From Haliotis rubra (taxonomy: Eukaryota): DNA of 64,000 nucleotides. How positions within the stretch are numbered: the stretch's first letter is position 1; each line of letters starts with the position of its first letter. The stretch covers positions 992,001 to 1,056,000 of the forward strand of contig NW_025765670.1 in the NCBI RefSeq assembly GCF_003918875.1, written 5' to 3'. Below the pieces are notes generated by a model. It worked only from the letters and a program-made list of their open reading frames with translations. It searched no databases and had not been told where the DNA came from. Positions 13,778 to 52,178 of this stretch are shown here, one piece after another. The translations under genes were made by a program, and so were the position numbers.

Positions 13778-13785
13778 CACTTCAT
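13778..13785 (-). CDS. Candidate micro first coding exon (MK-C)
   Basis: AAG ATG AAG TG|GTAGGT, phase 2. Unique CpG-containing sequence lies upstream (13800-14170). So short that chance is likely. Confidence 0.3.
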
Positions 13786-16700
13786 CTTTCAAATCACCGC
13801 CTCTAGTCATCACAAACAATTAGCCTTCAACAACTTCACCAACAATCTCACCTCCTTACCACCAGCCGTTCCACAAGGTAAAATCCAAAATAACCTGTAG
13901 GATATTAACAGGTATTAATTAAGCAAGCAGAAAGCACCGGTCACATTATTTTCGGCTCAGCACTAAACGTCCCAGTGCTGTAACAAGTCCCCAGTGTCTC
14001 AGCTGACGACACGTAACCACGGTCACATGCCTAGCACATCTCCATCCTCCCTATACCACATCCACTGCACACCGAGCACTCGCGATTGTTGACCGAGAAT
14101 GATAATGAGGGGATATTTACCTTCATGACCATGCTCATAAGCAAAAGTCGAGCTCTGACGTAACCTTTTTCGTACTCAGTAGACATACATGGAATATTTT
14201 AAATAAACGTCAGTTTTCAAACTTCTGGAGAGCGACAGAATTTGTTTTTGGTCATTTCCGTATTCATGACTCTTCAAAGGATTTAATGTCTGTATATTTT
14301 GAAAACGTTTGCCTATTATGCATCACCAGCTCATACAGAATACTTACATCATATTTACTGCTTCACACATTTACAAGCTATTTTCAGATCTCATTAAAGT
14401 TTTATAAATGTCAAACCAACCTACAATGGCAACAATGACCTGATCAAACAAACTTGTATGTGTTCACTGTCGAGATCTTCGAACCAGTTCCCATTTTGTA
14501 CAATCCAAAACTATACACACACCGTATTCACTATTTCAAGCATTTACCACTATTTTCAGTCTTCAATAACAGTTGTTTAGGGTCAAAACAAGCCTGAATG
14601 TTAAGAAAAGAAATGTTCTTAACTTGCCTGTGTTCACGAAAACTCCAAAACAGATCCCACTACACTCGATCATCCATGCAATGCTTACATGAAGCAAGAT
14701 TCACATTGAGATTGTGAAGTTCCCAGGTAAACCAAGCTGACAGTTGCACGATACTGATTACCCAGGATCAGTGGCTATCGGTACGTCTGTAAGTATAACC
14801 GTCTGGCTGGGGAGATCACAGAAGCGTAGAGTTTCCTCAGAGCTTGTTACAACTCTTCACAGTGACATAATACGTCTCATAAGGACTCACTCGTCTGTGA
14901 ATTTACATCTGTCTAAATAGTAACTATCCTTTAGGTCTGCCAGCCAAGATTGAAAACTGACCACAAATATAATCTCTACCTAACCATCGCCTCAGTTGAT
15001 CAAACCCAAGGAAATATCAAGTTCACTTACCCCACTGTCCTTCCAGCTGCAGGTTTGAACAAACCCAGTTGAGCACAAATATGTAATAACTCATAAATAT
15101 TATTTCAATTGGTGAATCCCAGCAATAAAAGTCCAATTAGATTCTCATAACGACTGTCACCACATAGGAAGTAATCACACAAGCTTCTGACATAATGTCA
15201 TGGTTCTGCGACCATGTGCTTACCACTTGAACTTCAATCTAATGCAATGTTGTAAGATGTGGTCCGACTCCGCAGTGGTAATTACAATCCGTGGTCATGT
15301 AACGTTTCCTAGCTTGCCTCAGCCAGTTACACAATGACCCTGAAACTTATACCCAAGGGAAGTGAGCGCGCGTGGAGGAGTCGTCCAGCTTTCTGAGACC
15401 CCACTCTAACAGGTTGCACTTCCTCACACTTAATTATTTTTGGCCATCAAAGACGAAGGGTTAACAGTGTTTGTTTCTATATTTTCTAAATTTGATCTTG
15501 CAATTACCCCATGTGTTTTCACTTTTTTGTTGAAAATGGTCTATGGAGGAAGGGACTGCTATGACAGACAACCTATGAAAATCTAGATTCATTTTCCGTT
15601 ATAAAATCCCTTACCAGTTTCACTTGCATAGAAATCCTGAGCGATCCTTATGGAAAGTAGTCCAATTACAAAACCTTCCTTCTTCCTCACATCCAGAAAC
15701 TGTCAGAATTCACGTATGGTTTAAAACCACTTCATGATGTTTTGCACATACACGCTACACCATCCAGACATATCTCAGCAAAACCCAAGTTATATCTCCA
15801 GTCACAGCAAACCTAAGTTGACGTCTGCTTCACACATCTGCTACTTGGACTGACCACCTGAACACCTGTACACATTACCCTGTGACCCAGGGTCAGTTGA
15901 GCCTGCCTCCACTGTAGGATTTTCACAACCATTACCTGAATTAGACAACAAAACTGGCCGGTCACGGTGTCGGTGTGGTTTGCCTGTATGCTTGTCCTTT
16001 CTAACCTGGGTGCTAGCAAGCAGTGAACATTGCCAAGTTCTGGTGTGAGGCAGATCTTTTGACCCAACACATAAAACAGCAGGCAAGATACTTTATTGTC
16101 CAGCAAGCACTTAGGTCCAGAACATTAAACAGCAATTCAAAGCTAGACACCAACAGCTACATTTAACATGCTTATGTAAGATATGATTACTGCATTGTCT
16201 GGTTATTTTTATATCTATTTCATCCAAGTCTTGAGTTAATGAGTCACACATAATCAAACAAAAGCCTGGTTTAATGAACTGTTTAAATAGATTGCATGCA
16301 CTAGTTTATAGGGAAGTTCATCAACATAACACAAGCACAACAGTAAATAAAAAAATTATGATTTTGAAATTTATGACCAAGAGAAGGAAGAATTTCAGAC
16401 ATTAAATCACCAAAATGTCAGAAGGAGTAAACTTGAGCGAACATTATCCAAATATTGTACCAGAAACTGAAACTATTCCCATGTCTGTTAGGCGCAAAAA
16501 TATTCCAACATGCATCTGTACCCATCATCTGAACTGATTAAATCATGGCTTACCATCATCGAATATCCAAAGCCTGTTCCACATACATCCTGAGTACATC
16601 CAGATTCACTAAAATGCTTGTCCAACTCAAACAAACACAAGGAAGACTGCACAAACATAAGAGAAGTACCTCTGTTCGATTACTCTAACACAACCCTCCA

Positions 16701-17605
16701 AGCAGAAATAAGACAAAGAGATGTAACCACAGCCAGTCCGTGGTGTCACCTGTGGGACGTATAGATAACCCATCCAGAATCACACAGGGTCGTACACAAC
16801 TGTGAGGGACAACTGAACCATGGCTGTTTTGATGGAGGGAGGTACCTTGAGAGGGCCCCCAGTCATCAGATGTGATCGTCACAAGCCTCCAGGTATGTCT
16901 ACGATCGTTACCCAATGATCCCAAAAAGATAACAAATCCTTCCTGCATTGTCATGTCACATGGAAACGTTTCGCCTTCACATTTAATTACTCACGATGCA
17001 ATTTGCTTGTCAGTTCTGTAATCATGTATGAATGAGAAAATTTGGGCATCAATTATATGATCGGCAGAGTCCCTACTCTGTGTAAATATTGTGATCCAAA
17101 TCCATTAAACATCATTATGTGAGCTGGCCTTTGATATTTAGCTGATGTGGCCCAAGCAACAGTCCTATTGAATGAACATGAAGGAGCCAATGAATATAAA
17201 GTGGGCTTAAAAGGCATATGATAACATAAATTACGACGTTTATTGTCACAGGACATTTATGTCGTGGTAAAGTCAGGGTGTCACTCAATATACAAACCAA
17301 CAAGGTCAGATCATCATGGATGAGGTGATTACCAAGAACTTGCCATCAGATGAACTGAATGGAAGCAGAATCGCAGTGAGCGGGAACATTTGATGGGAGT
17401 CATCTGGAGATGAATAAATTTATTCTGATGTCAGTGTGAATATTTACGAGTCAGCACTATTCTGGCTGTATGAAGCAGCATGTGGATCAAAAAGAAAAAG
17501 TCTTGGCGAAACTAACCAGACGTTGATGGGGAACAAATGGGCCATGCAATAATATGAACAGTCCTGCTGGGTCGCATGTTTGAACCAAACAGACATCATT
17601 CAGGA

Positions 17606-17778
17606 NNNNNNNNNNNNNNNNNNNNNNNNNNNNNNNNNNNNNNNNNNNNNNNNNNNNNNNNNNNNNNNNNNNNNNNNNNNNNNNNNNNNNNNNNNNNNNN
17701 NNNNNNNNNNNNNNNNNNNNNNNNNNNNNNNNNNNNNNNNNNNNNNNNNNNNNNNNNNNNNNNNNNNNNNNNNNNNNN
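17606..17778. other. Assembly gap (173 N)
   Basis: Run of n. Confidence 1.
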
Positions 17779-17905
17779 TCCAGCAATATCACGGTGGGGG
17801 ACATCAGAAATGGGCTTCACACATTGTAGTTTTTGTACTCATGTCAGGAATCGAACCTGAGTCTTCGGCATGATGAGCGAATGCTTTAACCACTAAGCTA
17901 TCCCA
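17779..17905 (-). mobile_element. SINE family A, cut by the assembly gap
   Basis: Family A body and head start immediately after the N run. Confidence 0.85.
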
Positions 17906-18120
17906 TTATTTTGCCTTAGAATCCATACAAGAAGGACCTATTCTACCTTACAATCAACACAGGGTTGACCTATTCTGCCTTACAATTCACACAGGAAAAC
18001 CTATTTTGCCTTGGAATCCACACAGGGTCGACCTATTCTGCCTTACAATTCACACAAGAAAAACCTATCCTGCCCTAGAATCCACACAGGTGGACCTATT
18101 CAGCCCTAGAATCCACAGGA
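17905..18120. repeat. ~32-bp minisatellite, ~6.5 copies
   Basis: Unit like cctattctgccttagaatccacacagg..ga. Confidence 0.85.
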
Positions 18121-19808
18121 GAATGCTGATTCATCCTGCATGCAATGGTTACTAGTCATCACACAGAGATGCATCAGATGGTGACCATGGGACATATTAG
18201 AAGTGATTACCACCCTCATACAGTCCGAGGTGTTACACCCAAATGGGCTTCCAGATCAGGAAACACTGTGTCCTTGAACATGTCCTTGAACATGCCGGCG
18301 CCATACCCCTGGTGATGGCCGAATATGATTAATATGACAGCTACTGGTCATTTATCTCCCGGGTTCTGGTGAGTCTGACCTTCACTTCAGACTGCAGCTC
18401 ATAAACCCTGTATAAAGCAAAACAATACATCTAGTGTGATGGATGCCACACCACATCCTGTTTGCCACATGGAAGGCAGATAAAATTTCAGCTCCGTGCA
18501 AAAAAAATAAGATCTGGCCAAGCAGACGGTCGGAGTTTGGAAAGGAATCGGAGATAAATCACTTCTTTGAACAACACGTTGACACCGACTGCACATTCTG
18601 TCACAGATTATTGCCATAAAACTAAACGTTATTATCCCAACATTTCTTTCTGCATGGAGATCTGATCAAGGAGGGTACTGTCAGCAGTTGCGCTGCTGCA
18701 TGTATATACAATGATATTATGCCATGCGTATGTGCCCTGATAGAAAATGTCACATGGAAGGAGTATCATAAATATTTAAGCCCCTGTCAGGAGCTGATAC
18801 ACCCAAAAGTGTCATCAGAGGTACAAGCTTGGATTCAGTTCTCCAAGAATATGAAGCAAGAGTATGTGCACCATCTCACCACAGCTGGTATATCATGATT
18901 ACAGCTACAGTCTTCACACCTTGTAATAAGAACATTAGTAGACAGCTTTGGTTAATATTCTTGTCCTCTTGTACAGAGTGTATACTTGTAACATCCAAAT
19001 GTACCGTAAGGATAATTGATGGTGTTGTGTTCACAGCACAGCTCAGACTATTGTGTATCAAAAGTCAGTTAAAGTCTTATTTGAATCACAAATCATCAAA
19101 CATAAGATACAGTATACCATATAGAGAGTCAGCTTGGTCCCATTTTATGCCAGATCCTGAATTGCTGATATTCCTGTAATGTTCTATAAACTATGACATC
19201 ACTATATCTTAACCTTGGTACATCAAGTCATCCACAGATTGTCGATGAATCTTATTTGGAAAGTCAGATTCAATAACAAAAATTGCCGAAATACATATCT
19301 TTGAAAAAGTTAACAGTATAAATACAGAATGGCTGACCTTTAAAAGAAAGCTAATTAATTATCCAAAAGAAATCAGTGAGATACCATCTTTACGAATCTC
19401 AACAGTATTTTGGCTGTATACATTCCACACTTTACTTTTCAATACATCTTACAAACTGCAACATTCCATTGTGTGATTTTATCATATAATTTGAGGCAGG
19501 TGGGTGGGTGCGACATTAATCTGTTTCTACAATATCCTAAAACGTATCAACCAGTATCGAGGACATGACTCGAAGAGCTACGAAAGGCAAAAGGTGATGA
19601 CATTTCGGCCAGGCCTTACAAGTCACTGGCCATGTCATACATCTGTGGGTGACAGCGAGGTGACATTTTGTTTTCCAACAATACAGGAAGTGTTGAGAGA
19701 AAATAGCTTATTAGTAATCCTAATATTACAAACACAGGAAAGCCTTGTCCTTTAGAAAGGCCATGTGGCTGTTGGATAAACATGAACATATCTCTAACCT
19801 TAACTGAC

Positions 19809-19968
19809 TGACTGAGTTTGGTTTTACCCCGCTTTTAGCAATATTCCAGCAATACCACGGTGGGGGACACCAGAAATGGGCTTCACTCATTGTACCCATG
19901 TGGGGATTCGAACCCGGGTCTTTGGGGTGACGAGCCAACGCTTTAACCACTAGACTACCCCAGCGCCC
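19809..19968 (-). mobile_element. SINE family A, full length
   Basis: Near-identical to 26639-26804. TSD ctaaccttaactgac (19794-19808, 19969-19983). Confidence 0.92.
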
Positions 19969-19985
19969 CTAACCTTAACTGACGT

Positions 19986-20265
19986 ACACACTGAAAATAA
20001 CTACAAAACACACATAAACTTTCACACACAAATAAACTACTGTGACTTCAGTATAACAAAATCTTTCATTATCAACTTGGACGTCATTCATATCAACACT
20101 TATGGAGCAATGTCAATTAATACACACTGAAAACAAGTAGAAAACATGCATAGACTTTCACACACCAAGAAACAACTAAGACAGTTGTAAAATATAATCT
20201 CTCATTATCAAACTGTATTACTCAGATATGATTCATATCAACACCTATGTAGCAAATGTCAATTG
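19986..20265. repeat. ~135-bp tandem duplication
   Basis: tacacactgaaaa...cattatcaa...attcatatcaacac...atgtcaatt occurs twice. Confidence 0.75.
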
Positions 20266-21521
20266 ATATATCATGAACGAAAAAATGTCCGAGCATATGA
20301 AACATTTTCATATACCATACACAAGTAGAATATCTCAGTTTTCACTATAAAATTAAAAACACATCCCTGAAAATATCAATGTACCCTAACTTTTCTTGTT
20401 CAGTATATATGAATCTGGCCTAATTAGTTTTAACAAAATAGATTGAAACATGCAGTTCAATATACAAATCGTGATGAAAAGGACAACTGGGGTACAGCGA
20501 CTACCTCAATGTAAGGAAGCCATGTATTAACAGACTCATGATGAACATCCCGTTCCATTCCAGCTGTCAGCCAGTTGAGCACAGCTGGACAAACATTTCA
20601 GGACAAGACTGTCTCACATCAGGCGATACGGAACATATGTACTACTGGTGTATAATAGACATTATTACCCAAGGTTAGGTTACATTTTTTCAGATTAGCG
20701 AATTAGCATAATCAATCAATTATATTCCATCACCGAGTAATCAAACATTTTTATTGACTAGATTTTCAGTCAATGTGACGTACGGCAGGATAATTTACAT
20801 GAATTCATAATGTTGGAACATATACATATATAGTAAATTGAACATACAGAAACATTCAAATATTATATCCAAAACGTTCGAGCAGCTAGATATAAAATCT
20901 GAAAAGACTATAGATAATATGTGTCCTTCATGACCTTAGAAACTAGGCTAAATATATCTTACTTTTCCAATAATTTATTAAAGTCATAGTATTTCTAAGC
21001 TAAGCAATTATTTGCAAGGTATATAGCTTTTTCATGTTTTGCTTCACGATGTCAACGAGCTCTATTAATCAAGATTGACACCCAGACCATGTTTCCCCCG
21101 TCGACAGAAAGTCAATACACTCCATCCTAATATAGACCCAACCACGCAACTAACTTCTCAATGAGCTATAACAATAGCAATAGAACCATATATATTAAGG
21201 CTCATAAAATATGCCCAATTTAGCATAATAAGACCAGAATAGCATACATTCGCACCAAACATCATCAAAATAAAAATTGACAAGAAATACCAATCATGAA
21301 CTGTCAAAGGGATATATACATTAATATGTATAAAATGATAATTTTGGTCTTATGTGGTAAACATGCATAAATTTTAGATAATATTAGCGGGGTATGTTGA
21401 CCTGTTATCAAATCTGATCTAATAAAATGATGAAATCAGCATCCTATATAAACCAGCACCGTTGTCTCGTAACAACACAGAGCTGTAAGCAAGGACTGAT
21501 GGTTATAATGACTTGTTCTAC

Positions 21522-21574
21522 CTTTTCTCCATCTCCAACTGCTGAATGCGAAGACGTACAATATGCTGCATCAT
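21522..21574 (-). CDS. Candidate alternative first coding exon of IQSEC (MMQHIVRLRIQQLEMEK-S)
   Basis: In-frame TGA upstream, ATGATG at 21574, 17 codons + 2 nt, donor AG|GTAGAA, phase 2. The peptide looks protein-like (amphipathic) and unique sequence lies upstream. Confidence 0.5.
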
Positions 21575-23660
21575 CACTGCTGTGCTTCACCTGTCCACTC
21601 GAAACAATCAGTTTTCCATGTCCTTTCCTACATCCAAACCTGCCCTAGCCATGTTGTCTCCTCAAAGTCGTATCCGAAGCGGAAAGCACTGTCCTCCATT
21701 TTTCCTTCCTACATTATGTTGATTGGAAACTGACCAAATCCAATAGTGGAAGGCAACTCTACATTTCAGTCAGCGATTTTCTGTTCTCTCACGACAAGCA
21801 GCCGCAGTCGACTGCATTGCTAATAAGCAAGTAGTAATAATTTGCAGTTAGTGCGATCGCCGCCGTGTTCGACTGTTTCCGTAGAGAAACCTTGGATATC
21901 GGGATCAATATTCGAGGGTATGAATATTGTAGCAGCCCCACAGCTGAGTTCCTAGCACAGCAGATGCCATTTAACAACCAATCAGTCAGATTGGTCCCAT
22001 TCACTGCGGCTCTTTCATTCACTGCAGTCCTGGTATATGACATAACATTTTACTATGTTGATGTACATCTGTCCAACACGCACAAACATGAGTTAGAGGA
22101 TGTCACACATTCAAAATGAGCTAACAGAATCAATATCCAGATTTACCTCGGTGACGGAATAACGTAAACTGTCCAGCCATTATCAGTGGGCAGATGTGGC
22201 CATAATTAGAGACAGACAATGAAGGACACAGCGCAGCTCCTTGCCGACTCACACTGTCCTGTCACCAGCACTCAGCTGGGATACAATGAACTACGCCTTT
22301 TAGAATTAACATGCAGGAATACACCGGCTACCAAACACAATGGAAAGAAAATTTTGGATCAATAAATTATTCAAGCCAAGCAGTTGTACACATGACTGGA
22401 TGGGTCTGTGATCCTTTGGATTTTGTAATGATGATGCTCAACTTACACTTCTAACAAGGAAAAGGAACTTGAAGCTTATTTTACATAAGTGTGGTATCAC
22501 TTTCAACTCATTGGACTTTTAGTGTTTATGTATAATAAATGCAAATTGTTTAGTTTCATATAAATCTCAAAAGAAAATTACTGACATGAATCATTAAGCT
22601 TTTGAGAACTAGAAATGAAGAATATTTTACAATTTTCAAAGTTTATTAACTTCCTCGTTTATTTATTAAATAGAGAATTCCAAAAAAAAGTATTTTGTTA
22701 TCAAATTAAGCAATCCCAAGAGATTGCAAAGAAACATTTTTTTGTAAAAAAGGAAAATATTTTTGAATAATTAATTAGTTAATACATAATCTCCGATATA
22801 AATTAAGGAGGTGTTGAGTATGTTTGCGATATTAATGGCACTGTTCAATATAACTCCATTTATTGATAGAAATGTCACAATGACAGTACCATTGACTGAG
22901 ACATGATCAATTCAGACAATTACAATGAGAAGATTAGGTCATGTTAGGAAAATACCAATATTTCACAAACAATGATTGTAAGTACCATTTGTATAAGATC
23001 CTATCATTAACTGAATTCATTTACTACTGTCTGAAACAAATATGGAAATTTTAATATTTTTAAAAGTCTTTTACAGGCATTTAGAACTTGAAAGAACATT
23101 ATACAATTGTAATGATATAAACTTTTGCAATTTAGTAATCTTTGCAAAGACATTCTAGAGCTATTTCTTGCCTCTTTATCAAATGATTAATAAGTAGGGC
23201 TAAATAGTTAATACATACATATATATACACGTCTTTTACATTTTAATCATAATCCCTGATATTCCATTTAACATTTATATATATTCCTGTGTCAAAGATG
23301 TTTAACTTTGTATCGTGTGGCCTCTACTGCCAGTTGGTGACCATGTCGGATTCTATGCCCACGGTCAGTATTGATGTTCAACTACAGCCCCAAGTCAATG
23401 CTAATGTCCACTATGGCTTTAGATAGTTCACCTGTGGTCAGTTACATACATGTATGCCCAGCCAGGCACCCTATTAATAAGGTGATAAAGACCTTGACAG
23501 CTGGCCAGTGTTAATTAAGCATACACCCCACCTGGACTGGTTAATATAGACTTGCATGAACATGACCAGCTTTTGAAAACGTACCGAACGTGGTATACTG
23601 TGGGAAACAAATTAGGGAACACCAGTGTTCCTTTACTTGTTCTCAGAATTTCACTCAGTG

Positions 23661-23755
23661 CAATACAAAGCTTGGAAGAAACTAGGAATAGGATAGAAGA
23701 GACTAACAATACAAAGCTTGGAAGAAACTTGGAATAGGATAGAAGAGACTAACAA
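23661..23755. repeat. 46-bp tandem duplication
   Basis: caatacaaagcttggaagaaact.ggaataggatagaagagactaa occurs twice. Confidence 0.9.
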
Positions 23756-24342
23756 CTAGTCTCTAAAATATTTTACAGAATTTTTTTTTTCATAATAAAA
23801 TAAATTAAATATAATGAAAAGGAACCCTGAGACTTTCTCCAATTTCTGTGGAAATCTACACTTGCAACATAATCTAGACTTGCATAGGCTTTCTAGGATA
23901 TGTTTGTTTCAGCGTCTGTATCACAGACTAAGGATAGCTTAACACTTTTACTTTCATGTGATACCTTTTTTCTTTCTTTCAGTATATGTTGATATGAAAA
24001 GTTGATACTGAATATAACACGTGATAAAGATTATCGTAACAGTAAGTGTAAGTTTACCATTATGACAGGCGATGGAGGACAGAGTGACAAGAACTGTAAC
24101 ACAATAATTACATGCTGTGGGTAGGACATCATATGAAAGCTGGAACATGTTTTCTGTTCACCTCTGTCTAATGAAAACACAAGACTTAGCATCTGTGATA
24201 TCTCCTTAGAGCTGGACTGAGTAGCTTCATTTACAGCTATTGCTGTATCCTGAACTCAGCACAGCAGGGAACAAGCATAGGTTTCAGGTTGTGTATCTGA
24301 ACAGGGAACCGTACCGACTTGATTAATGAAGAGCAGACTCAC

Positions 24343-24383
24343 CTCAAAACAACACAGGCTTCTCTGTGTCTGTGTGCAAACAT
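24343..24383 (-). CDS. Candidate alternative first coding exon of IQSEC (MFAHRHREACVVL-S)
   Basis: ATG at 24383, 13 codons + 2 nt, consensus donor AG|GTGAGT, phase 2. Confidence 0.4.
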
Positions 24384-24964
24384 TAAAGTCGACCTGCTGA
24401 TGTCTGCATCTGTTTGTCTGAGATGTTGTCGGCCAGAACTGTACGTGTCTAAGATGTGTCAAGATATTACTGTCAGAACATTGCACAATCACATCTGTCC
24501 ATCTGACTTCATTCCATGCTGAGATCTGCCTCCAACACATATATTTCCTTCCCAAACAACAAGCAAAATAACCTCTTCCATTTTTCAGACTGGCATTAAC
24601 AGTTCGACAGATGACTCTCCAGTACAGACTATCATCAACTTGTAGTCCTGCCTTGAGCCTGTCTGTAACCCCCATGTGACCTGTGTGCTGTTGATGGTAT
24701 CTGTCCCTATCACACCTTCCACCACCAAACTCTCACTTTCATATCAGAATCTCACGTTTTAATCACAGAACCATCACACATTCAGACCTATCTGTGGGTG
24801 TCATGTGTCCAGTGCATATCATACAGAAAGGTGAGACCACCTTGGAGAAGAACGGGAAATGAATCTTTATTGGCCATCACTTCAAGAGATCTCCTTCTTT
24901 GGGTCTACCTTATCTCAATTGTTTTGTATCTCATTGCATGAAAGAAAGCTGTGGTCATGTACTG

Positions 24965-26638: not shown

Positions 26639-26804
26639 CTGACAGACTTAGTTTGGTTTTACGCCGCTTTTAGCAATATTCCAGCAATATCACGGCGGGG
26701 GACATCAGAAATGGGCTTCACACAATGTACCCATGTGGGGATTCGAACCCGGGTCTTCGGCGTGACGAGCCAACGCTTTAACCACTAGGCTACCCCACCG
26801 CCCC
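26639..26804 (-). mobile_element. tRNA-derived SINE family A, full-length young copy
   Basis: A box TAGCCTAGTGG, B box GGTTCGAATCC, tRNA-Asp/Glu-like GTCACGCCGAAGACCCGGG, body ending GCTGGAATATTGCTAAAAGCGGCGTAAAAC plus a simple-repeat tail. 12-bp TSD attctctgaaga (26627-26638, 26805-26816). Confidence 0.92.
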
Positions 26805-27185: not shown

Positions 27186-27332
27186 CTGACTGAGTTTCAT
27201 TATACGCTGCTTTTAGCAATATTCCAGCAATATCAGAAATGGGCTTCACACATTGTACCCATGTGGGGAATCGAACCCGGGTCTTCGGCGTGACGAGCGA
27301 ACACTTTAACCATTAGGCTACCCCACCGCCCC
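27186..27332 (-). mobile_element. SINE family A with internal deletion
   Basis: Family A sequence. TSD cctgaaccacagga (27172-27185, 27331-27344). Confidence 0.9.
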
Positions 27333-34110: not shown

Positions 34111-35264
34111 ATGAAATGAAATCCTTAATTAACAATGATACTTCACTCTACTACATAATCCACTAGCCCAAAGCCTGGTCTTAAAGTTTGGATAAGTTTG
34201 TTCAGCTAATAAAAGCCCATATCACAAAACCGAACGAAAATAATACATATAACAAAATTTGGGATCAAATGTTTTTGGTATAGTTTCAGCAAAGGCTCAA
34301 GAACTCACCACAGAATCTGTCTTCTACAGCAGAGCTGGATCAGAATCGGTACACACGCCATTGCCGGGCATAAAATCCAATACACACCAAGCAGTACATA
34401 TACTCCTTTATATCACGCTTCTTCCAGTCACAAATTGTCAGGTCAATTCTGTGAACATCTGTACAAATTCTCAGTCTTTCATAAAGAAGTCCTCCCAGAA
34501 AGTCAGATTCCTAACCACAATGTCACAAATTCTCCATCTGTGTTCTGTGTGATTCAATTTTAAACCAACCAGCTCCTTGAGAAGTTGTTCAGAAACTCGA
34601 ACATACACTCCAAGTTGGTGTGTTGATAGCCCTGGGTAATATTCTGGAAGTTCGGGTCAGTTTGCCAGAAGCCCATGGGCAGCTCAATAATAAATCACAC
34701 TGTCAGTCCACAACACACCTTGATAACATAAGGTCATTACAGGCGATTATGTGGTAAACTTACCAGCTTATGTCGTCTACATAATATACCAGCTTTCTGG
34801 GGCTTAATGAAGGAAACAACTTCAAGGACAAAGAAAGCAAAAAGTAACTGCAGGAAAACATAAAACCCATCATTATCGTGACATGGCGTCAGGTTGCAAA
34901 TGATGAAAGGGAGGTACAAGGAACTGAATGCATCCTTGCATAGATAACACTGATGTTCCTCATGAGAGGGTATATGTTGATAACAAGCTGGTTCAGGGAT
35001 AATTAATGATTTATGCTGCTAAATATCAGCCGTATTACAGTTGGTGCATGGTTATAAATGCAACAGAAAACCATTGGAGTTTCGTCAGTTGGGATCGGTA
35101 TTTGAATTAGACGTAAGACCTCAGTCAATTTCGTTTGTTGTTTACCCAACGCTGCTCATAGAAATATTCCCTCTGGTGTAATTAATATAGTCTGGAGCTG
35201 ACTATCCATTGCTTGACATCATGAGCATCGATCTATCATCAATGAAAACAGCGTGAACTCTTCG

Positions 35265-35372
35265 AGTGAGTGAGTTGGGTTTTGCGGGGCTTTTAGCAAT
35301 ATTCCAGCAATATCATGGTGGGGGACACCAGAAATGGGCTTCACACATTGTGCCCATGTGGGGAATCGAACG
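35265..35372 (-). mobile_element. SINE family A, 5'-truncated
   Basis: Tail and body up to the B box. Confidence 0.85.
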
Positions 35373-36097
35373 TGTACTCTTGAAGTTGAGCATGAAAGTC
35401 AAGGGCTCCCTATAACAGAAGTTACAGAACTCGGGAAGATGCAGCCATACCATAAAAGAAGCCTGAAGGACCTCAATACCCCTTAATTTCAAATCAGTTG
35501 TCCAAAACAAATCCATGATGTATCAACAATGGGGCAAATAATCTGTAATCATCCATTCTAATGCTTCAGTACGACTTTGCACGACTTCCATTGGAATATA
35601 GAAAACTTTGCACTACTTACATCTTTTAAAAGTTGTCACCGAGAAACTCTCCTCCACTGATGATGATACTAAAAACTGTCTGACTATATTTTCCCCTATT
35701 TCTAATTATGTCAAAAGGTCTTCTTTATCATTGCAAAAATTGCAAAGCTTTTGTATATAACACTGTTTGAACAATTCGGTCACCCTCAATGAAGAATGTT
35801 TGTTCAAGAAAACAATCACCACTCCTTCACCAAACCCAAAAGAACACCTGAAACTTGACACAGATATCTCGACTAATTCAATGAAAGCCATTTAGTCGGA
35901 TTTGCTCTGCACTATTCCGTATTTGAAAACACACCCATTCTTCAAACCTGACTGCACTAGGACATCGTTAAAGTTTAACACTTGACAGAATAGCACTGGA
36001 ACTAGCTCAACTGAGACAAGCACGGTGTACCCACACAACGTATAACAGAGCTTTAATGGACCTTAGACACACTAATCACATTTTCACAGTGAGAGAG

Positions 36098-36449
36098 AGT
36101 GAGTGAGTGAGTGAGTGAGTGAGTGCTTTGGACACAATTCAAGTTTTTCAAATTTTGAGTGAGTGAGTGAGTGGATGCATGCATGGGCGAATTGGGTTAA
36201 ACAATGCTTTGGAGTGAGTGAGTGAGTTCACTTTTACGCCACTTTTAGCAATATTACAACAATATTATGGCAGGGGACACTAGAAATGGGCTTCACATCT
36301 TGTACCCATGTGGGGAATCGAACACAGCATGACGATGCTTTGATGACTTGGCTACCCCACCGCCCCTATTTTTTGGACACAATTCAAGTTTTTGATATTT
36401 TAAGTGAGTGAGTGAGTGAGTGAGTGAGTGAGTGAGTGAGTGAGTGAGT
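36098..36449. repeat. (GAGT)n microsatellite cluster
   Basis: Runs at about 36098-36124, 36157-36172, 36212-36226 and 36403-36449. Another run at 41392-41420. Confidence 0.9.
36211..36366 (-). mobile_element. SINE family A within a (GAGT)n-rich cluster
   Basis: Family A match. Flanked by duplicated tttggacacaattcaagttttt and (GAGT)n runs. Confidence 0.85.
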
Positions 36450-42680: not shown

Positions 42681-42843
42681 GACGGTGGGGTAGCCTAATG
42701 GTTAAAGCGTTCGCTCGTTACACTGAAGACCCGGTTTGATTCTCTACATGGGTACAATGTGTGAAGCCAATTCTGGTGTCCCTGCCGAGGTATTGCTGGA
42801 ATATTGCTAAAAGCGGTGTAGAACTAAACTCACTCACTCTCTC
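42681..42843 (+). mobile_element. SINE family A
   Basis: Family A sequence. TSD cttgataggtg (42670-42680, 42844-42854). Confidence 0.88.
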
Positions 42844-43597: not shown

Positions 43598-43640
43598 GCA
43601 GCAGCAGCAGCAGCAGGAGCAGCAGCAATAGCAACAGCAC
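43598..43640. repeat. Imperfect (CAG)n repeat
   Basis: Seen directly. Confidence 0.85.
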
Positions 43641-45795: not shown

Positions 45796-46234
45796 CTTTA
45801 ACAAATGTAAAACATTCTTCAAAGCAGGTCTAAAATATTCCACTACCCTTTCTGATGATTTGACAACAATTATAACTCAAACTACCATATGATTGTATTG
45901 ACTCTGATAAATTCAAATATTTCAATGATTCCATTTCGACATGGGCATTTATTACGTCAAATACAGTATTCCTGTTTCTATCTGCACTACTGAGACCAAT
46001 TAACCCAGCCAAACTACATAGTATCCCATATCTCTCCACCACAGATACACTGGTCCCCAGCGTGCCAGTCTGGTGAATGGCCACATGCTTGTCTTGATTG
46101 TTTCCTACTTGAAACACCATGAACCAGTTGAACACTTGATTGTGATTGTATTACAGTGTGTTTATGGTAAAGTAGTTCTTACACGTATCACCCATGTGAA
46201 CATGGTGATAAACACGCAATATTTTAAACCTTAA

Positions 46235-46422
46235 TGAGTGAGTGAGTGGTATGAAGAGTGAATGAATGACTATATGTGTGAGTGAGTGACTGCATGTGTG
46301 AGTGACTGCAAGTGTGAGTGGAATGAGTAGTGAGTGACTGCATGTGTGAGTGAGTGACTGCATGTGTGAGTGGAATGAGTAGTGAGTGACTGCATGTGTG
46401 AGTGGAGTGAGTAAGTGAGCGA
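46235..46422. repeat. Compound (GAGT)/tgactgcatgtgtgag satellite
   Basis: Repeated gagtgactgcatgtgtgagtg units next to a SINE A tail. Confidence 0.85.
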
Positions 46423-46440
46423 GAATTCTAGATTTAATAG

Positions 46441-46588
46441 AGTGAGTGAGGAGTGAGTTGTGTTTTACGCCACTTTTAGCAATATTCCAGCAATATCCCG
46501 GCGGGGGACACCAGAAATGGGCTTCACACAGTGTACCCATGTGGGGAATCTAACCCAGGTCTTCCGTGTGACAAGCAAATGCCTAACA
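46441..46588 (-). mobile_element. SINE family A
   Basis: Tail, body and partial head. Confidence 0.85.
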
Positions 46589-46615
46589 CCAAAAACAACA
46601 AAGCATAGGACTTAC

Positions 46616-46647
46616 CATGTCAAACCAGGCCTTTGAACCCACTGCAT
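46616..46647 (-). CDS. Candidate first coding exon (MQWVQRPGLT-C)
   Basis: AAAATG context, 10 codons + 2 nt, donor TG|GTAAGT, phase 2. It lies between two SINEs, which weakens the case. Confidence 0.2.
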
Positions 46648-46826
46648 TTTGTAATACTGCACGGCAAATGTTGCGAATGTTTCACAGAAATATTGACGTT
46701 ATGTTTCACAGAAATATTGAAGTTAACACAACAAGCATTTCATATTCAAATGAAACATCAGTTTCTTAGGGAAAATGAAACAGGCACCCCAAAAACAACA
46801 TAACCATGTACATAAAAACAAGTCTC

Positions 46827-47030
46827 TTGCTTGTCATAAGAGGTGACTAACGGGATCGGGTGGTCAGGCTCACTGACTTGGTTGACACATGTCACCATAT
46901 CCCAATTGTGTACATCGATGCTCAGGATGTTGATCACTGGAATGTCTGGTCCAGACTCGATTATTTACAGACTGCCGCCATATAGCTGGAATATTGCTGA
47001 GTGTGGCGTAAAAACTAAACTCACTCACTC
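46827..47030 (+). mobile_element. SINE family B, 5'-truncated
   Basis: tgcttgtcataagaggtgactaacgggatcggg...gctggaatattgctgagtgtggcgtaaaa...actcactc. Confidence 0.85.
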
Positions 47031-47067
47031 TTATGTCCTGCATGCTACTAACCTTGAACTAACACTC

Positions 47068-47240
47068 TAACACTTCTACTCACTTAGTCTTGATCCCCCC
47101 CGTAACACTTCTACTAGCCTTGATCCCCACGTAACACTTCTACTAGCTTTGATCCCCACGTAACACTTCTACTAGCCTTGATCCCCACGTAACACTTCTA
47201 CTAACCTTGATCCCCACGTAACACTTCTAGCCTTGCTCCA
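47068..47240. repeat. 29-bp minisatellite, ~5.5 copies
   Basis: Unit gtaacacttctactagccttgatccccac. Confidence 0.9.
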
Positions 47241-47436
47241 AGGCTGTACAGAATGATAAGCCCATGGATGTATAGTAATTCTATCCTTTAAAGAGGCAAA
47301 TCTAGATAAGCAGACAGGACATCTAAGGACGTCAGTCTGTTAGAGGGGCAATGTGTTCTTTAATTAATATTTAGAAATCATCATTTAAAATATTAATTAT
47401 TACCTTTGAAACTTGTGCAAGTCTACACTTCCATGT

Positions 47437-47773
47437 GAAGTGAAATGGGGTTTAACGTCATAATTTAAATTATTTCACTCATATGCTGTGCATGCGTGGG
47501 TATGTGCGGCTGCTTGTACTAGCCCAGACTTAAGCTGGTTTTATTGTGTTAGCTCACTTAGATACCATGCCGCAGTGAAGCATGAATGCCCCACTCAGAC
47601 ACATTACACTGACTCCGACCCGACCAGTCCTTGTACCCATTAGTGCCGAGCGCCAGGCAGGGACCAACAAGTACCATATTTTAACGTCTTTTGGTATGAC
47701 GCAGCTGGGGATCGAACCTGCAACCTTTCACTCTCCGGTCGGACGCTCTAACCACTACACCACGGAGGCGGTC
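47437..47773 (-). mobile_element. tRNA-derived SINE family C (Meta-domain-like), full length
   Basis: Head GGTGTAGTGGTTAGAGCG...GGTTCGATCCCC, then AAAATATGGTACTTGTTGGTCCCTGCCTGGCGCTCGGCA, which resembles the Meta central domain. Second close copy at 60609-60931. Confidence 0.82.
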
Positions 47774-47905
47774 GATGATGATGATGATGATGATGATGAT
47801 GATAGGTTGATTTCATGTTGATTTGTCTCGCATTTACCTGTATTTGTTAGATGGGTGAGTTATAAATGACTTACTTACTCTGCAATTGTGCAGATGTTCA
47901 TATGA
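47774..47905 (-). mobile_element. Second copy of the (ATC)n-tailed retroelement 3' end
   Basis: Reverse complement of 10922-11064. Confidence 0.65.
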
Positions 47906-49361
47906 ACTCTCCGGGCGGATGCTCTAACCACTACACCAGGCGGTACACTTCTATGTCAGTCTATACATGTGGACCAGTTTCACTTCACTATTGCTCAGTT
48001 ACAAGTTTGTTACATTATTCCTAATTCGCCCCAAACTTCCTTCCTCGGCAGTGTTAACACTGACACGGGCCAGCTAAAGATAAAGTGACACTCTTGTAAA
48101 ACTACGTCGGAAACAATTTAGTTGGAGGTTATCTTGACATTGTATTAATAGCTGCTGTTGACGAGTGACAAAATGTCTTGCCCAAAGTGCCTACAAAAAC
48201 TTAACATCATCATTATCTAACTCTGATATCATTTGACATGCTCATTTATCATAATCACAAAACATAAGGGTATCATGTCATGTGCATTAACGCTATCATT
48301 TACATATGACTTCATGAAACAGAAAGTGAATTTATCATTTTCTTTTTCTTATGACTTTAAAAGTAAAAAAACAACTTCAAGAATTAATAAGAGAATTTTA
48401 AATATTTGAAACTTCTTACATAATTTTGGTCACATGAAAATGTCGTAATGACTATTTCTGAATGATTTTACAAGGTTGATGGGTAAGTACTGATTTAAGA
48501 AATGGTGCAATGTCCAAATTTAATATTCATCATTTCCTCTAGAACAATCAGCTATAGATATGACACATGGAAATCTACTAGAATCACGAGAACATTGCAA
48601 ATCTTGGTCATCAATCCTGAACATGAATTCTGGGAAAAACTACTCCAGCCACATCACATAAGCATTGTGAGAAGTCACTTTGAAGTAAGAAATCCAAGAA
48701 AGTAGAGTTGAAGGAGATCAATGATCTCAAGAATATACTAATCAGCTCTCTCTTAACTACCAGCTGGCCCCGGAGTAAGGCGAGATTACTTCAGTGGAAC
48801 ACGTGCACAGTGCACTTGCGTCATGGTCCCGTCACTCCTGTCTTTATCTCGCCGATATCTACATGACACACCAGCAACAGAACCAGGATCTACATGCACT
48901 GTTACATAAACAATGTCATAAAACAGGATGTCCATCAACTGGGTTTTAATCCTGTTTTCAAATAATAATGACATTCGTCACTGAAAGGTCGGTTAAAAAT
49001 ATCACTGACTAAATGTCATAAAATCTCTCAACTTCTTTCTTATGGATCTGGTTCTGTGATCTTTTCCATGGGAGTAGGGTTTGACATCACTTTTGAAAAT
49101 ATAAAACCATTTTGTTGACTTATATGATCCATCAACATGTACAACAAGACCATCAGCATAAAGCCATTTTGTTTTGGAGATACTAAAATTGGGCAAACTC
49201 TACCTTTGTGGGAATAGAAGCATTTGGCTACCATGATATCCAAATGCCCCTCTTCAGAAATGATTAAATAAATGATCAGTTTTGTGACTGATATTGTGAG
49301 CATTGATCCATCCCATCGGTATACACTGACACTATCAAAAACAAGGCAACAAGTCTGATCC

Positions 49362-49853
49362 CAGAGGCCCAGATAAGCTGCGTATCCGGGTAAAATATGC
49401 ATAGAAAATTTCCAATAACGCATTGAAAATTAATTGTTGCGTACCAATTACGCATTTAAAATGTTAGATACGCAAAAAGTTTAAAACAAATGCGTATGGA
49501 ATATATTTATAAAAATCGCTTGCATAATGAAAAAGACATTGATTGCTATCAAGTTGTACTGTTAGTATAGGACAAGTGTTGTACTGTCAGTATAGGAAAA
49601 GTGATTTTTTATGAAATCATTTCCATTATATTTAAGTTGGTTTTGATTAGGTATGACATAAGGCAGAACATACCTGCTTAGTAAATTTACCCAATGACAT
49701 AATACTTAGGTGAGTAAAATGACTGAAATACGTACATATTTGAAAGCAGTGGGTAACTGAAAATGAAATACCCACTCAACATTCATAATACCCACTCCAA
49801 AAAAATAAAGTGGGTACAGTACCCACATGAGCTAACTCTTATCTGGAGCTCTG
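49362..49853. mobile_element. Non-autonomous DNA transposon with 16-bp TIR and 6-bp TSD
   Basis: TIRs CAGAGGCCCAGATAAG / CTTATCTGGAGCTCTG (14/16). TGATCC on both flanks. Subterminal TGCGTA (left) and TACCCA (right) repeats. Confidence 0.8.
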
Positions 49854-52098
49854 TGATCCAATTGTTCACCATTTACGATCAGCAAAGACATTTGCCGTGA
49901 TCTATCACACACAAAAACCCAAAAGTAAACCATCCTCAGATGTCATGATAAACAAGCCAAACAGCAAAGGTGAACAATTTCAATGAATGTTAGATGTTTT
50001 GTCTCTAAACTCCAAGAGAAGCAAATAACTCTAGATAGGAGCTGAAGTCAGACCCTGTGGAAACTATAGACTTGCTTCATTTACAGCATCTTCATTTACG
50101 GCAGTGCTGGGCAGACGGGAAACTATAAGGTTCAGGACTGTGAGACAGACAAGTGAGTGTGTAAGCAAGAAGTGATTTCATCAATAAAAGAGTTTGTCCT
50201 CAACAGTCAGTTTCATAAACAGTCATCGACTAATGTTCCGGAATGTTTGCGTAACATTACTTACATAGAATGGTGAAGTGTCAATACATCCAGATCACCT
50301 GACAACTGCTCCCCACAACGGTCAGCCCAGGGACCTACTGACCAACACTAACAGCGTCATGGCATCAGAAAGGCCGATCCTCCACATCCAAGCCAACAAA
50401 GATACATAGTGAGTGGAATATTGACACAACAAATGGATTAAGCTAATCCACTGAAGTGACCTTGACCTGGTATGTGAGAGACTGACAACCGACAAACCAT
50501 CACCATCACTGGTTACACGTTTACATTTAGGTCCCTGTCGACTCGCTGTTGACTTATTCGATATAATCAATGAAATGTTATTAAGAAGACAAGTAAATGA
50601 AGAGGGACATCACAGACAAAACAATTCTGTGTGTTGTAAGAAGGAGAATGGAAATGGATAACTTATGTCACACAGGGACTTCATTACAATACCCCTAAAG
50701 CTGGTCCCCTACAGTTGTTGTATACATATCCATCATGAGGGCCCATCAGTTGTAGTTACTGGCCCTGACCATGGTACCTGAACAAAACATACATAAACCG
50801 AACTCTGCAAAACTCTACCTGTATCAGCTTGCGTAATACAGAAAATAATGTTTACCAAAAACAATCTATAAGACAGCAGCTTGTATATAATCAAGTTTGG
50901 ACCAGGCAATCCAGTGAATGATACTGAGAGGATCGAGCCATCAGGGAACTAAGACATGCAATCAACCAAGTCACACAGCTAGACCTTCCAATCCATTATC
51001 GAGCTTTGTGGACCAATTCTACCCCTGCATCCCCACAAGTGGCAAAGAAGAGTTGGTGCAAGTAAACCACCTTGATTTGCTGCATCGGGTTCGAACCCAG
51101 TCAGAATCAATGCAGAAACACAATGACACATTTACCCAGTCAGTCTGGAGTCATTTACCCTGGAGATAATCATCCATTACCTCACAAGCATAGAAAGAGG
51201 TTCCCATTATGAAGTCCTGCCATTTCATCACATATATGTTGATGTGTAGGAAGACAAGCATTTGGTTAGAAACAAAACATTCGTAAATTAACTGAAAAAT
51301 AAAAATCCTTCTACTTCTAAAATAAATAAAAATCATAAATAATATTGCATTAAAAACTAATATTATATAAGGTGACATTATATTAAAACAGATTAAAACC
51401 CTTAGTACCTGCTTAACACTGTAGCCTGTTACAGATTTGAAACACATACCTATTAAGTAACGGGCCTATATAGGCTGTTCATCTTACTGACCTACTGCCT
51501 GATATATGTAGTAACTCTCACCTTAACCATCCAGTTCAGTGACAATTCATCCCTTACAATCAACACATCAAACACACAACATCAGTGCAATGTCTATCTC
51601 TCCAGAACATGAGTTTGTACCTACGCTCAACAAGAGCTTCCAACTATTTGAAATAATGGCATTTTTGAACATTTGGCGGTAACTGCCAGTCACTTCCTAT
51701 GATATCATCGAGGTGCTGTTTGCTGTGGAGTTGGGGCAAGCTGAGAGGGCATGAGTTGGGCCACGTAATAGCTCCATCGCAAAACAACAGGAACTCTCTT
51801 AACAAGCGCCATGCCACTTTCTCAATACTCAATGTCCTAACCCACGCACATTTTTAACTTTTGCAGTATTGACCAATTAAAACGCAAGTTATAAGGCAAG
51901 GAAATTTAAGAAAGGAAATTTAAGGTGGGAAATATGGGAACATATGGATATTAACGCCCAACTGCCTAAAAAAGAATTATGGAGAATTCTTTTTGTAAAA
52001 TTTTCACGGAAGGTGCAACATTTCAGAAAAAAAATACTTTTTAATTTGACACTGATTGTGTTAAAGTTTGAATGTAATTAAAAGAAAAAAATTCTTAC

Positions 52099-52178
52099 CG
52101 TTTCTTAAACCTTGCTATTTTGAAGAATAGTAGACTGCAACAATCTTCAGATGTAGATGCAAAAACAGCTTGGTTCAT
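52099..52178 (-). CDS. Candidate alternative first coding exon of IQSEC (MNQAVFASTSEDCCSLLFFKIARFKK-R)
   Basis: ATG at 52178, 26 open codons + 2 nt, then donor CG|GTAAGA. Phase 2 matches the acceptor at 4152. Confidence 0.5.

What the first reader, a model, noticed from the sequence alone, without database searches (positions are those of the whole stretch)
13778..52178. Dispersed array of phase-2 candidate alternative first exons feeding one constant IQSEC exon
Seen: the big exon needs a phase-2 donor. At least eight ATG-initiated, stop-free minus-strand segments upstream end in a phase-2 GT donor: 13785-13778 MK, 21574-21522 MMQHIVRLRIQQLEMEK, 24383-24343 MFAHRHREACVVL, 25599-25448, 34110-34097 MIYI, 41563-41550 MLYA, 46647-46616 MQWVQRPGLT, 52178-52099 MNQAVFASTSEDCCSLLFFKIARFKK. 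Several have a few hundred bp of unique, repeat-free sequence upstream. Known: vertebrate IQSEC1/2 use alternative promoters that give different N-termini. Inference: this locus may be a much-expanded variable-first-exon/constant-body switch generating many Arf-GEF N-termini, some Cys-containing or basic and so possibly membrane-targeting. Caveat: short ATG..GT phase-2 hits also arise by chance in 60 kb, so only some are likely real.
Basis: partly seen in the sequence, partly recalled or inferred. Interest (0 to 1): 0.7.

Follow-up and report, generated by a model that had tools for sequence, protein, structure and literature searches.

The report
Alternative first exons of abalone IQSEC

Summary
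All eight ATG-to-GT segments exist exactly as written. As a class they are chance-level: the minus strand upstream of the acceptor holds 1,832 such phase-2 pairs, against 1,879 and 1,803 in the other phases.

The big exon (4152-2626) is 97.8% identical to Haliotis rufescens IQSEC1-like protein. RefSeq isoforms of three Haliotis species share one body and differ only in the N-terminus, exactly at this acceptor.

Nine such N-termini map to this genome as intact ATG exons with phase-2 GT donors:
- Six lie in the window: 4451, 13785, 21574, 34361, 52178, 63866.
- Three lie beyond it, about 79, 103 and 132 kb.
- Five candidates (24383, 25599, 34110, 41563, 46647) have no support.

RNA-like contigs of this species cover exactly this exon. 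By where their alignments end, they join at least three different upstream ends to 4152.

The same layout occurs in other gastropods and in bivalves. The coiled-coil, MYICITG and MAxxFWSP exons keep the same order in abalone, apple snail and oyster.

This is a known kind of feature (alternative promoters and first exons), already in database gene models but apparently undescribed in papers. The scan had not noted this locus before.

The parts
2626..4152 (-). Constant large exon (509 codons including split ones) with the IQ motif. It is the common acceptor for all first exons, and its first base is codon position 3.
   Evidence: Searches give frame, acceptor and donor. It is 97.8% identical to XP_046372179.2 residues 26-531. 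Contigs of four RNA-like runs cover exactly 2625-4152/4. Sec7 exons follow downstream at C780:990243-990416 and 975779-975967.
4387..4451 (-). First exon of the H. rufescens X5 / H. cracherodii X3 type, encoding MKSVSAGVSCSLFSVCLTQPF+L. Donor GTACGT; it lies only 234 nt upstream of the acceptor.
   Evidence: tblastn 21/22 identical, E 2e-11; coordinates. Not used in the four RNA-like runs: no depth at 4201-4600 and no joint.
13778..13785 (-). Probable first exon of the H. rufescens X12 type (MK+C). Donor GTAGGT.
   Evidence: RefSeq N-terminus MKC. Only two ATGAARTG|GT sites lie in the 128-kb 5' region: this one, and 15735 with a poor donor GTTTTA. In-frame stop directly upstream. The assignment is likely but not certain.
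17606..17778 (.). Assembly gap (N), intronic, between two first exons.
   Evidence: A SINE copy abuts it at 17806-17893. No exon or candidate touches it.
21522..21574 (-). First exon of the H. cracherodii X6 type, encoding M-MQHIVRLRIQQLEMEK+S. Donor GTAGAA.
   Evidence: 16/16 identical to XP_071083659.1. 75% identical to Gigantopelta aegis X3, MHHVVRMRIRQLEMEKS.
34309..34361 (-). First exon of the H. rufescens X3 type. Here it can start only at an internal ATG, giving MACVPILIQLCCRRQIL+C. Donor GTGAGT.
   Evidence: tblastn 72% over 25 aa, E 3e-10. The frame is closed by a stop at 34415-34413, so the longer H. rufescens start is not available here.
52099..52178 (-). First exon of the H. rufescens X4 type, encoding MNQAVFASTSEDCCSLLFFKIARFKK+R. 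Donor GTAAGA.
   Evidence: tblastn 67% with an in-frame 2-codon indel, E 3e-7. Single copy in the genome.
63826..63866 (-). First exon of the H. rufescens X8 / H. cracherodii X7 type, encoding MADLFWSPGLLGK+S. Donor GTAGGA. It belongs to the MAxxFWSP family shared with Pomacea, oysters and Mercenaria.
   Evidence: 13/13 identical. Family. Collinear position in Pomacea and C. virginica.

Best explanation
The window holds the proximal half of the 5' region of an abalone (Haliotis) IQSEC-type Arf-GEF gene on the minus strand. At least nine alternative first coding exons are spread over about 128 kb. Each carries its own ATG and 8 to 218 coding bases, and each ends in a GT donor after codon position 2. 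Each is spliced to the single acceptor at 4152 of a 1,527-nt constant exon, which is followed by the Sec7 and PH exons.

The most likely mechanism (inferred, not shown) is promoter choice. Each first exon has its own transcription start. Being a first exon, it has no acceptor, so only the cap-proximal donor of a given transcript pairs with the first acceptor downstream. The first exons lying in between are removed as intron.

The most distal exon encodes the ancestral coiled-coil N-terminus. The others replace it with short peptides. So the array switches between a coiled-coil form and several forms that lack the coiled coil and carry different micro-N-termini.

Some of these are old and constrained: MYIC[IV][TI]G, MAxxFWSP and MQHIVRLRIQQLEMEKS. 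Others, the Cys-rich X2, X3 and X4 types, are Haliotis-specific and evolve fast. They may matter mainly as carriers of promoters.
For: (1) The listed RefSeq isoforms of H. rufescens, H. cracherodii and H. asinina that keep the full-length body share it and differ only N-terminally at '[10 protein letters not shown]', the first residues of this exon.
(2) Nine N-termini map to this genome as ATG...NN|GT exons. The split-codon residue predicted with the acceptor's C equals the RefSeq residue: R, S, L/I, C, C, S, C, G, G.
(3) All nine regions are single copy within 194 kb.
(4) RNA-like contigs of four runs cover the exon exactly and carry 58-163 further bases 5' of 4152. At the 3' junction all end at 2625. 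At the 5' junction they end at 4154, 4153, 4153 and 4152, so the upstream exon ends in AG, in xG and in non-G respectively. That implies at least three different donors.
(5) The same junction-limited N-terminal variation is annotated in Patella, Gigantopelta, Pomacea, Biomphalaria, Physella, Mizuhopecten, C. virginica, Mercenaria and Ruditapes, with 2 to 10 distinct N-termini each.
(6) In C. virginica, Pomacea and Physella loci each N-terminus is one exon with a phase-2 donor. The order coiled-coil > MYIC > ... > MAxxFWS > ... > common exon is the same as in abalone.
(7) A MYICVTG+GT exon that is absent from the listed Pomacea isoforms sits at the predicted collinear place.
(8) MYIC exon DNA differs between abalone, oyster and Physella mainly at third codon positions, while upstream sequence does not align.
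(9) The X8 and X6 types are 100% identical to sister species, although the coiled-coil exon is only 88% identical.
Against: No transcription start was observed for any first exon, so separate promoters are inferred only from the first-exon anatomy.

The letters 5' of 4152 in this species' contigs were not shown. So no specific first exon is proven to be used in this species, and the proximal X5-type exon was not used in those four runs.

Each run's contig passes the junction unbranched, which means one donor dominates per sample.

RefSeq 'X' isoforms are computed models. X2, X3 and X4-type peptides are only 67-72% identical to H. rufescens, and the X3 start codon is not conserved. This fits weak or no constraint on those peptides.

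Isoforms that start at the internal MLERKYGG, several accessions per species, show that some first exons are non-coding. So the coding capacity of some first exons may be incidental.
Confidence: 0.78

Rival explanations
1. All eight segments are chance ATG..GT hits in a long intron, and the constant exon is fed by a single upstream exon.
For: Phase-2 hits (1,832) are no more frequent than phase-0 or phase-1 hits (1,803; 1,879). Five of the eight match nothing. Each RNA-like run shows one unbranched contig through the junction.
Against: Three of the eight match RefSeq N-termini of sister species (two exactly, 52178 at 67%), and six further first exons map nearby. Contig alignment ends at 4152, 4153 and 4154 imply at least three donor ends. 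The array is conserved and collinear across molluscs. My own arithmetic: 8 random picks among 1,832 pairs with 6 real ones would be expected to give 0.03 hits.
Confidence: 0.03
2. The first exons are real transcription starts, but the peptides are by-products. The array is a set of alternative or cryptic intronic promoters that regulate where and when the gene is expressed, and the short N-termini have no function of their own.
For: Several isoforms start at the internal MLERKYGG from non-coding first exons. X2, X3 and X4-type peptides diverge fast, and the X3 start shifts. N-termini within one species are unrelated to each other. There is no Cys enrichment across molluscs.
Against: MYIC[IV][TI]G, MAxxFWSP and the LEMEKS peptide are conserved between classes or orders, with synonymous variation. 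X8 and X6 types are 100% identical in sister species while the coiled-coil exon is 88%.
Confidence: 0.12
3. There is one promoter far upstream, and the ATG-bearing exons are mutually exclusive internal cassette exons chosen by splicing, not by promoter choice.
For: No start site was observed. Mizuhopecten X2 joins the MYICVTG exon to an extra internal cassette before the common exon, so internal alternative exons do exist at this locus.
Against: Every N-terminus begins with the exon's own ATG and an in-frame stop lies shortly upstream. After the coiled-coil exon such an exon would therefore end the reading frame rather than extend it. No isoform combines two of the N-termini except that one scallop model.
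Confidence: 0.07

Closest known systems
RefSeq gene models of the same gene in sister species (H. rufescens XP_046372177-189, H. cracherodii XP_071083653-663, H. asinina XP_067685075-77)
   Same: Same gene, same constant body, same junction. Nine N-termini are recovered here, most nearly unchanged and X2-X4 types at 67-72%.
   Different: These are computed models in other species. Here the exons are placed on this genome, one start codon differs (X3 type), and 12 of the 27 cluster members could not be listed, so H. rufescens X6, X7, X9 and X10 are unseen.
Vertebrate IQSEC1 and IQSEC2 alternative promoters / initiation sites
   Same: IQSEC2 isoforms arise from an upstream and a downstream promoter, and the long form carries an N-terminal coiled coil said to promote self-assembly (PMC9409358). 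IQSEC1 v1 and v2 have unique N-termini followed by a common N-terminal extension (PMC7955138).
   Different: Two or three starts in vertebrates against 8 to 12 in abalone, scallop and oyster. Here several N-termini are micro-peptides of 3-17 residues. No sequence similarity of the short N-termini to vertebrate ones was seen.
Clustered protocadherin / UGT1A variable-first-exon arrays (from general knowledge)
   Same: Many first exons in a row, each joined to the same first constant acceptor. The cap-proximal-donor logic is the inferred mechanism here too.
   Different: There the variable exons are large paralogues that encode whole domains. Here they are tiny, mutually unrelated and not duplicates of each other.
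Synaptic scaffold and regulator genes with promoter-defined N-termini, such as SynGAP
   Same: Different N-terminal sequences from alternative promoters combine with a common body and change function (abstract of PMC3621422, seen).
   Different: No functional data exist for the mollusc IQSEC N-termini.

Membership tests
IQSEC/BRAG Arf-GEF | IQ motif N-terminal to the Sec7 domain | tested here: met
   The IQ-like stretch [21 protein letters not shown] lies in the exon. The Pfam IQ hit PF24609 is weak (E 0.0027, below cut-off), but the exon is 97.8% identical to RefSeq IQSEC1-like protein.
IQSEC/BRAG Arf-GEF | Sec7 domain followed by the IQSEC-type PH domain in the same gene | tested here: met
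   Sec7 exons lie downstream on the same strand at C780:990243-990416 and 975779-975967. tblastn of the H. rufescens protein follows the gene to residue 821, and the rest lies beyond the fetched DNA. Homologues carry PF01369, PF16453 and PF22697.
Alternative-promoter / variable-first-exon array with a constant acceptor | Several exons, each with its own ATG and a donor of the phase the acceptor needs | tested here: met
   Nine exons, all of length 2 mod 3 with GT donors.
Alternative-promoter / variable-first-exon array with a constant acceptor | Each is joined directly to the same acceptor in RNA | tested here: inconclusive
   Met in sister-species models. In this species the contig ends imply at least three donor ends at 4152, but their letters were not shown.
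Alternative-promoter / variable-first-exon array with a constant acceptor | Each first exon has its own transcription start | not testable with these tools
   No CAGE or 5' end data. Contigs cannot show starts.
Protocadherin/UGT1A-type paralogous variable-exon cluster | Variable exons are paralogues of one another | tested here: not met
   All-against-all comparison groups N-termini across species but never within a species.

The most novel reading that the evidence does not exclude
The mollusc IQSEC 5' region is an ancient, collinear 'N-terminal code' dating at least to the gastropod-bivalve ancestor. A fixed series of promoter-linked micro-exons (MYICITG, MAxxFWSP, LEMEKS and others) each gives the same Arf-GEF body a different short signal for lipidation, membrane or synaptic targeting, or turnover, in place of the self-associating coiled coil. 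A spider isoform that starts MYILIDG hints that one of them may predate molluscs.
Probability: 0.35. Interest if true: 0.65.

Novelty: new member of a known kind. Interest (0 to 1): 0.45.

Why it matters
IQSEC/BRAG proteins control Arf6-dependent membrane traffic at synapses and adhesions, and in vertebrates their N- and C-terminal variants change localisation and function.

This work shows that molluscs keep 8 to 12 promoter-linked N-termini. Three of them (the coiled coil, a 7-residue MYICITG start and an MAxxFWSP start) keep sequence and gene order between abalone, other gastropods and bivalves. That gives concrete, short, testable peptides for asking what an Arf-GEF N-terminus does.

For the scan there is also a caution. 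Listing ATG..GT segments in the right phase has no statistical power by itself. It was homology to sister-species models, not the sequence pattern, that separated the real exons from chance.

Tried and rejected
- The reads tool (one call, window 1-6000) did not print the loose ends at 4152, so the 58-163 upstream letters of the contigs remain unknown. Only the alignment end positions could be used.
- The X5-type exon as the donor in those runs: rejected, because there is no depth at 4201-4600 and no joint.
- Fetching the H. rufescens, Mizuhopecten, Gigantopelta and Mercenaria loci failed because the gene ranges are 109-187 kb. P0186 is not on record, since only the longest product is kept. So I made no exon-versus-intron divergence comparison within Haliotis.
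- Twelve of the 27 members of the Haliotis protein cluster could not be listed. H. rufescens X6, X7, X9 and X10 are therefore unseen.
  - 25599 (51 aa), 34110 and 41563 (5 aa each) fit no H. rufescens isoform length.
- I did not build or search joined (spliced) protein models. Exons were searched one by one, by reference or as short peptides.
- Cys enrichment as a general property of the N-termini: rejected across molluscs (5.9% against 5.5% null). It holds only for Haliotis.
- Pfam on ten intronic ORFs of 100 aa or more: nothing.
- Donor strength does not separate real from unsupported candidates. Real donors include GTAGAA and GTACGT, while unsupported ones include GTGAGT and GTAAGT.
- A paper search found no description of mollusc IQSEC isoforms.


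Full report
**The constant exon.** On the minus strand an open frame runs from an acceptor (pyrimidine tract, AG at 4154-4153) to a GTAAGT donor at 2625-2620. Base 4152 is the third base of a codon, so the upstream exon must supply two bases. The exon carries an IQ-like motif; the Pfam hit is weak. Sec7-domain exons follow downstream on the same strand of the same contig; the window is G000:C780:992001-1056000. Contigs of four small, RNA-like runs of the same organism cover exactly 2625-4152/4154. They cover nothing of the flanking intron apart from repeats, and they continue into the Sec7 exon. The exon and its borders are therefore real and transcribed.

All eight are as written: ATG, no stop, length 2 mod 3, GT next.
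- The minus strand of 4153-64000 holds 1,832 ATG..GT pairs in phase 2, 1,879 in phase 1 and 1,803 in phase 0.
- With GTRAGT donors the counts are 20, 19 and 9.
- The plus strand behaves alike.

The pattern alone says nothing.

**The assembly gap.** Positions 17606-17778 are N. The gap lies between the exons at 13785 and 21574 and touches no candidate. A SINE copy starts right after it at 17806. The 105-aa 'ORF' across it is an artefact. I did not try to fill it, and continuity across it is untested.

**What the gene is.**
- The exon's translation is 97.8% identical to residues 26-531 of XP_046372179.2, IQSEC1-like isoform X4 of Haliotis rufescens. So the genome is a Haliotis.
- Its size (1.378 Gb, 2,855 contigs) and earlier notes of this scan suggest blacklip abalone. 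I did not verify the species.
- The 90% cluster of that protein holds 27 sequences from H. rufescens, H. cracherodii and H. asinina, of which 15 were listed.
- The listed full-length isoforms share one 968-residue body that begins at '[10 protein letters not shown]', the first residues of this exon. They differ only before it, in N-termini of 3, 7, 14, 17, 22, 25, 36, 37 and 73 residues.

**Mapping the N-termini to this genome.** I used tblastn and pattern searches on the window and on 130 kb of flanking contig fetched from the same assembly. Nine intact exons resulted. All are on the minus strand, all start with ATG, all have length 2 mod 3, and all are followed by GT.

| Type | Window coordinates | Peptide (split-codon residue after +) | Donor |
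|---|---|---|---|
| X5 | 4451-4387 | MKSVSAGVSCSLFSVCLTQPF+L | GTACGT |
| X12 | 13785-13778 | MK+C | GTAGGT |
| X6 | 21574-21522 | MMQHIVRLRIQQLEMEK+S | GTAGAA |
| X3 | 34361-34309 | MACVPILIQLCCRRQIL+C | GTGAGT |
| X4 | 52178-52099 | MNQAVFASTSEDCCSLLFFKIARFKK+R | GTAAGA |
| X8 | 63866-63826 | MADLFWSPGLLGK+S | GTAGGA |
| X2 (beyond the window) | 78749-78640 | MGCCEVFMSLF... | GTAAGC |
| X11 (beyond the window) | 102954-102935 | MYICII+G | GTAAGT |
| X1, coiled coil (beyond the window) | 131972-131755 | 73 residues | GTAGGT |

- In every case the residue made by the exon's last two bases plus the C at 4152 is the residue RefSeq shows at the junction.
- The X5-type intron is only 234 nt long.
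- The MKC assignment rests on 8 nt. Only two such sites exist in the 128 kb, and the other (15735) has a poor donor, GTTTTA.
- All nine regions are single copy within the 194 kb examined.

- Three of the eight are backed: 13785, 21574 and 52178.
- Three real exons in the window were missed.
- Five match no listed N-terminus of any mollusc: 24383, 25599, 34110, 41563 and 46647.
- The 46647 candidate lies between a SINE and a high-copy repeat. The regions tested around 24383, 25599 and 41563 are single copy genome-wide, as are real exons, so uniqueness does not discriminate.
- Twelve cluster members could not be listed. By isoform length order, 24383 and 46647 could still correspond to unseen H. 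rufescens isoforms, but the other three could not.
- My own arithmetic: three hits from eight picks among 1,832 pairs is far above random picking (expected 0.03).

**RNA in this species.**
- At the 3' junction the contigs of all four runs end at 2625, whatever their strand.
- At the 5' junction they end at 4154 (run X2), 4153 (runs X3 and X4) and 4152 (run X1). They carry 58, 163, 97 and 106 further bases that lie nowhere in window 1-6000.
- The intron ends ..c-a-g. So the upstream exons end in AG, in xG with x not A, and in a base other than G. That implies at least three different donors.
- AG fits the X6 or X8 type. xG fits the X12, X3, X4, X2, X11 or X1 types.
- The non-G end fits none of the mapped exons except X5, which is excluded by zero depth at 4201-4600. 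At least one used first exon is therefore still unmapped.
- Each run has one unbranched contig through the junction, so one donor dominates per sample.
- This is an inference from alignment ends; the letters themselves were not shown.

**Beyond abalone.**
- The same junction-limited variation is annotated in other molluscs. Distinct N-termini per species among the listed isoforms: Patella 2, Gigantopelta 2, Pomacea 4, Biomphalaria 8, Physella 6, Mizuhopecten 10, Crassostrea virginica 9, Mercenaria 6, Ruditapes 8.
- All-against-all comparison groups the N-termini into families across species but never within a species. The families are:
  - the coiled coil, in all species, which also matches the N-termini of spider, tick, insect and rotifer IQSEC;
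  - MYIC[IV][TI]G, in Haliotis, Biomphalaria, Physella, Mizuhopecten, C. virginica and an unnamed Logan/ENA sequence;
  - MAxxFWSP, in Haliotis, Pomacea, C. virginica, Saccostrea, Ostrea and Mercenaria;
  - MQHIVRLRIQQLEMEKS, in Haliotis and Gigantopelta.
- In three loci that could be fetched, every N-terminus is a single exon with a phase-2 donor. The orders are:
  - C. virginica: coiled coil, MYICITG, MGFGW..., MALMFWSP, four more, common exon;
  - Pomacea: coiled coil, MDAMFWS, two more, common exon;
  - Physella: coiled coil, ...MYICITG, four more, common exon.
- Abalone has coiled coil, MYICIIG, MGCC..., MADLFWSP, then X4, X3, X6, X12 and X5, then the common exon. The shared exons are collinear.
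- As a test of that order, I looked for a MYIC exon in Pomacea, where no listed isoform has it. MYICVTG followed by GT lies at L027:18438, between the coiled-coil and MDAMFWS exons.
- MYIC exon DNA of abalone, oyster and Physella differs mainly at third codon positions, and the upstream DNA does not align. This fits selection on the peptide.

**How it probably works.** Shown: many ATG-bearing exons with compatible donors, one acceptor, sister-species models joining each to it, at least three donor ends in this species' RNA contigs, and deep conservation of some exons and of their order. Inferred: each exon has its own promoter, and the cap-proximal donor of each transcript pairs with the first acceptor at 4152. 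The intervening first exons lack acceptors and are spliced out. In-frame stops just upstream of the ATGs argue against their use as internal coding cassettes after the coiled-coil exon.

The functional contrast most likely to matter is the coiled-coil form against the forms without it. The coiled coil of IQSEC2 is reported to promote self-assembly (PMC9409358).

The short peptides may add targeting or lipidation signals, but this is untested. Cys is enriched only in the Haliotis-specific N-termini (13.9% against 5.5% in null segments, p 2e-4). Across molluscs only Lys and Arg are enriched. The X2, X3 and X4 types are only 67-72% identical to H. rufescens. Some isoforms start at the internal MLERKYGG from non-coding first exons. 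Part of the array may therefore matter only as promoters.

**Known or new.** Alternative promoters and unique N-termini are described for human IQSEC2 (PMC9409358) and IQSEC1 (PMC7955138). The abalone isoforms themselves are in RefSeq as computed models. It is therefore a new member of a known kind. The added observations are the placement of nine first exons over 128 kb in this genome and the class-wide, collinear conservation of micro-N-termini.

**Limits.** I did not search any joined (spliced) protein model. No letters were put into the gap. Nothing here looked human.

Noticed in passing
window 17806-17893, 19863-19950, 26698-26785, 27226-27313, 35321-35408, 36273-36360, 46504-46591, 53330-53417, 56298-56385, 57293-57380, 59397-59484; also 5537-5597: At least 11 copies of one SINE-like element with a tRNA-like core (GGGGAATCGAACCCGGGTC...) lie in the intron. 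Short contigs matching the copy near 5401-5600 reach summed word depths of 8,000-24,500 in the RNA-like runs, so the family is abundant in those libraries.
   Followed up: partly
window 10094-10277: Tandem duplication of a 92-nt AT-rich unit, 93% identical.
   Followed up: no
window 24256-24675 (-): A 139-aa ATG-started ORF in a genome-wide single-copy stretch, with no Pfam match. Its meaning is unknown.
   Followed up: partly
window 46828-46947 and 47487-47738 / 60675-60929: A 120-nt repeat with many copies in the 194 kb around the gene (75 hits in all for that query), and a roughly 250-nt pair of repeats 13.2 kb apart at 90-91% identity.
   Followed up: no
L027:92030-94951 and L028:86899-92846: A KDM5-type (JmjN/ARID/PHD/JmjC) gene lies tail-to-tail just downstream of IQSEC in both Pomacea and Physella. 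This looks like conserved synteny. It was not checked in abalone.
   Followed up: no
protein P0183 (Stegodyphus dumicola isoform X3): A spider IQSEC isoform begins MYILIDG, 5 of 7 residues like the mollusc MYICITG start. Chelicerates also share an MFG[VLI]GEPPLVCQEAVF start. This could be chance or a wider conservation of N-terminal micro-exons.
   Followed up: no
protein P0243 (Mizuhopecten isoform X2): Here the MYICVTG exon is followed by an extra 33-residue cassette before the common exon. So the locus also has internal alternative exons in scallop.
   Followed up: no
proteins P0197, P0200, P0205, P0213, P0219, P0253, P0276: In seven species an isoform starts at the internal MLERKYGG, often under several accession numbers for one protein. 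This implies further, non-coding alternative first exons.
   Followed up: partly
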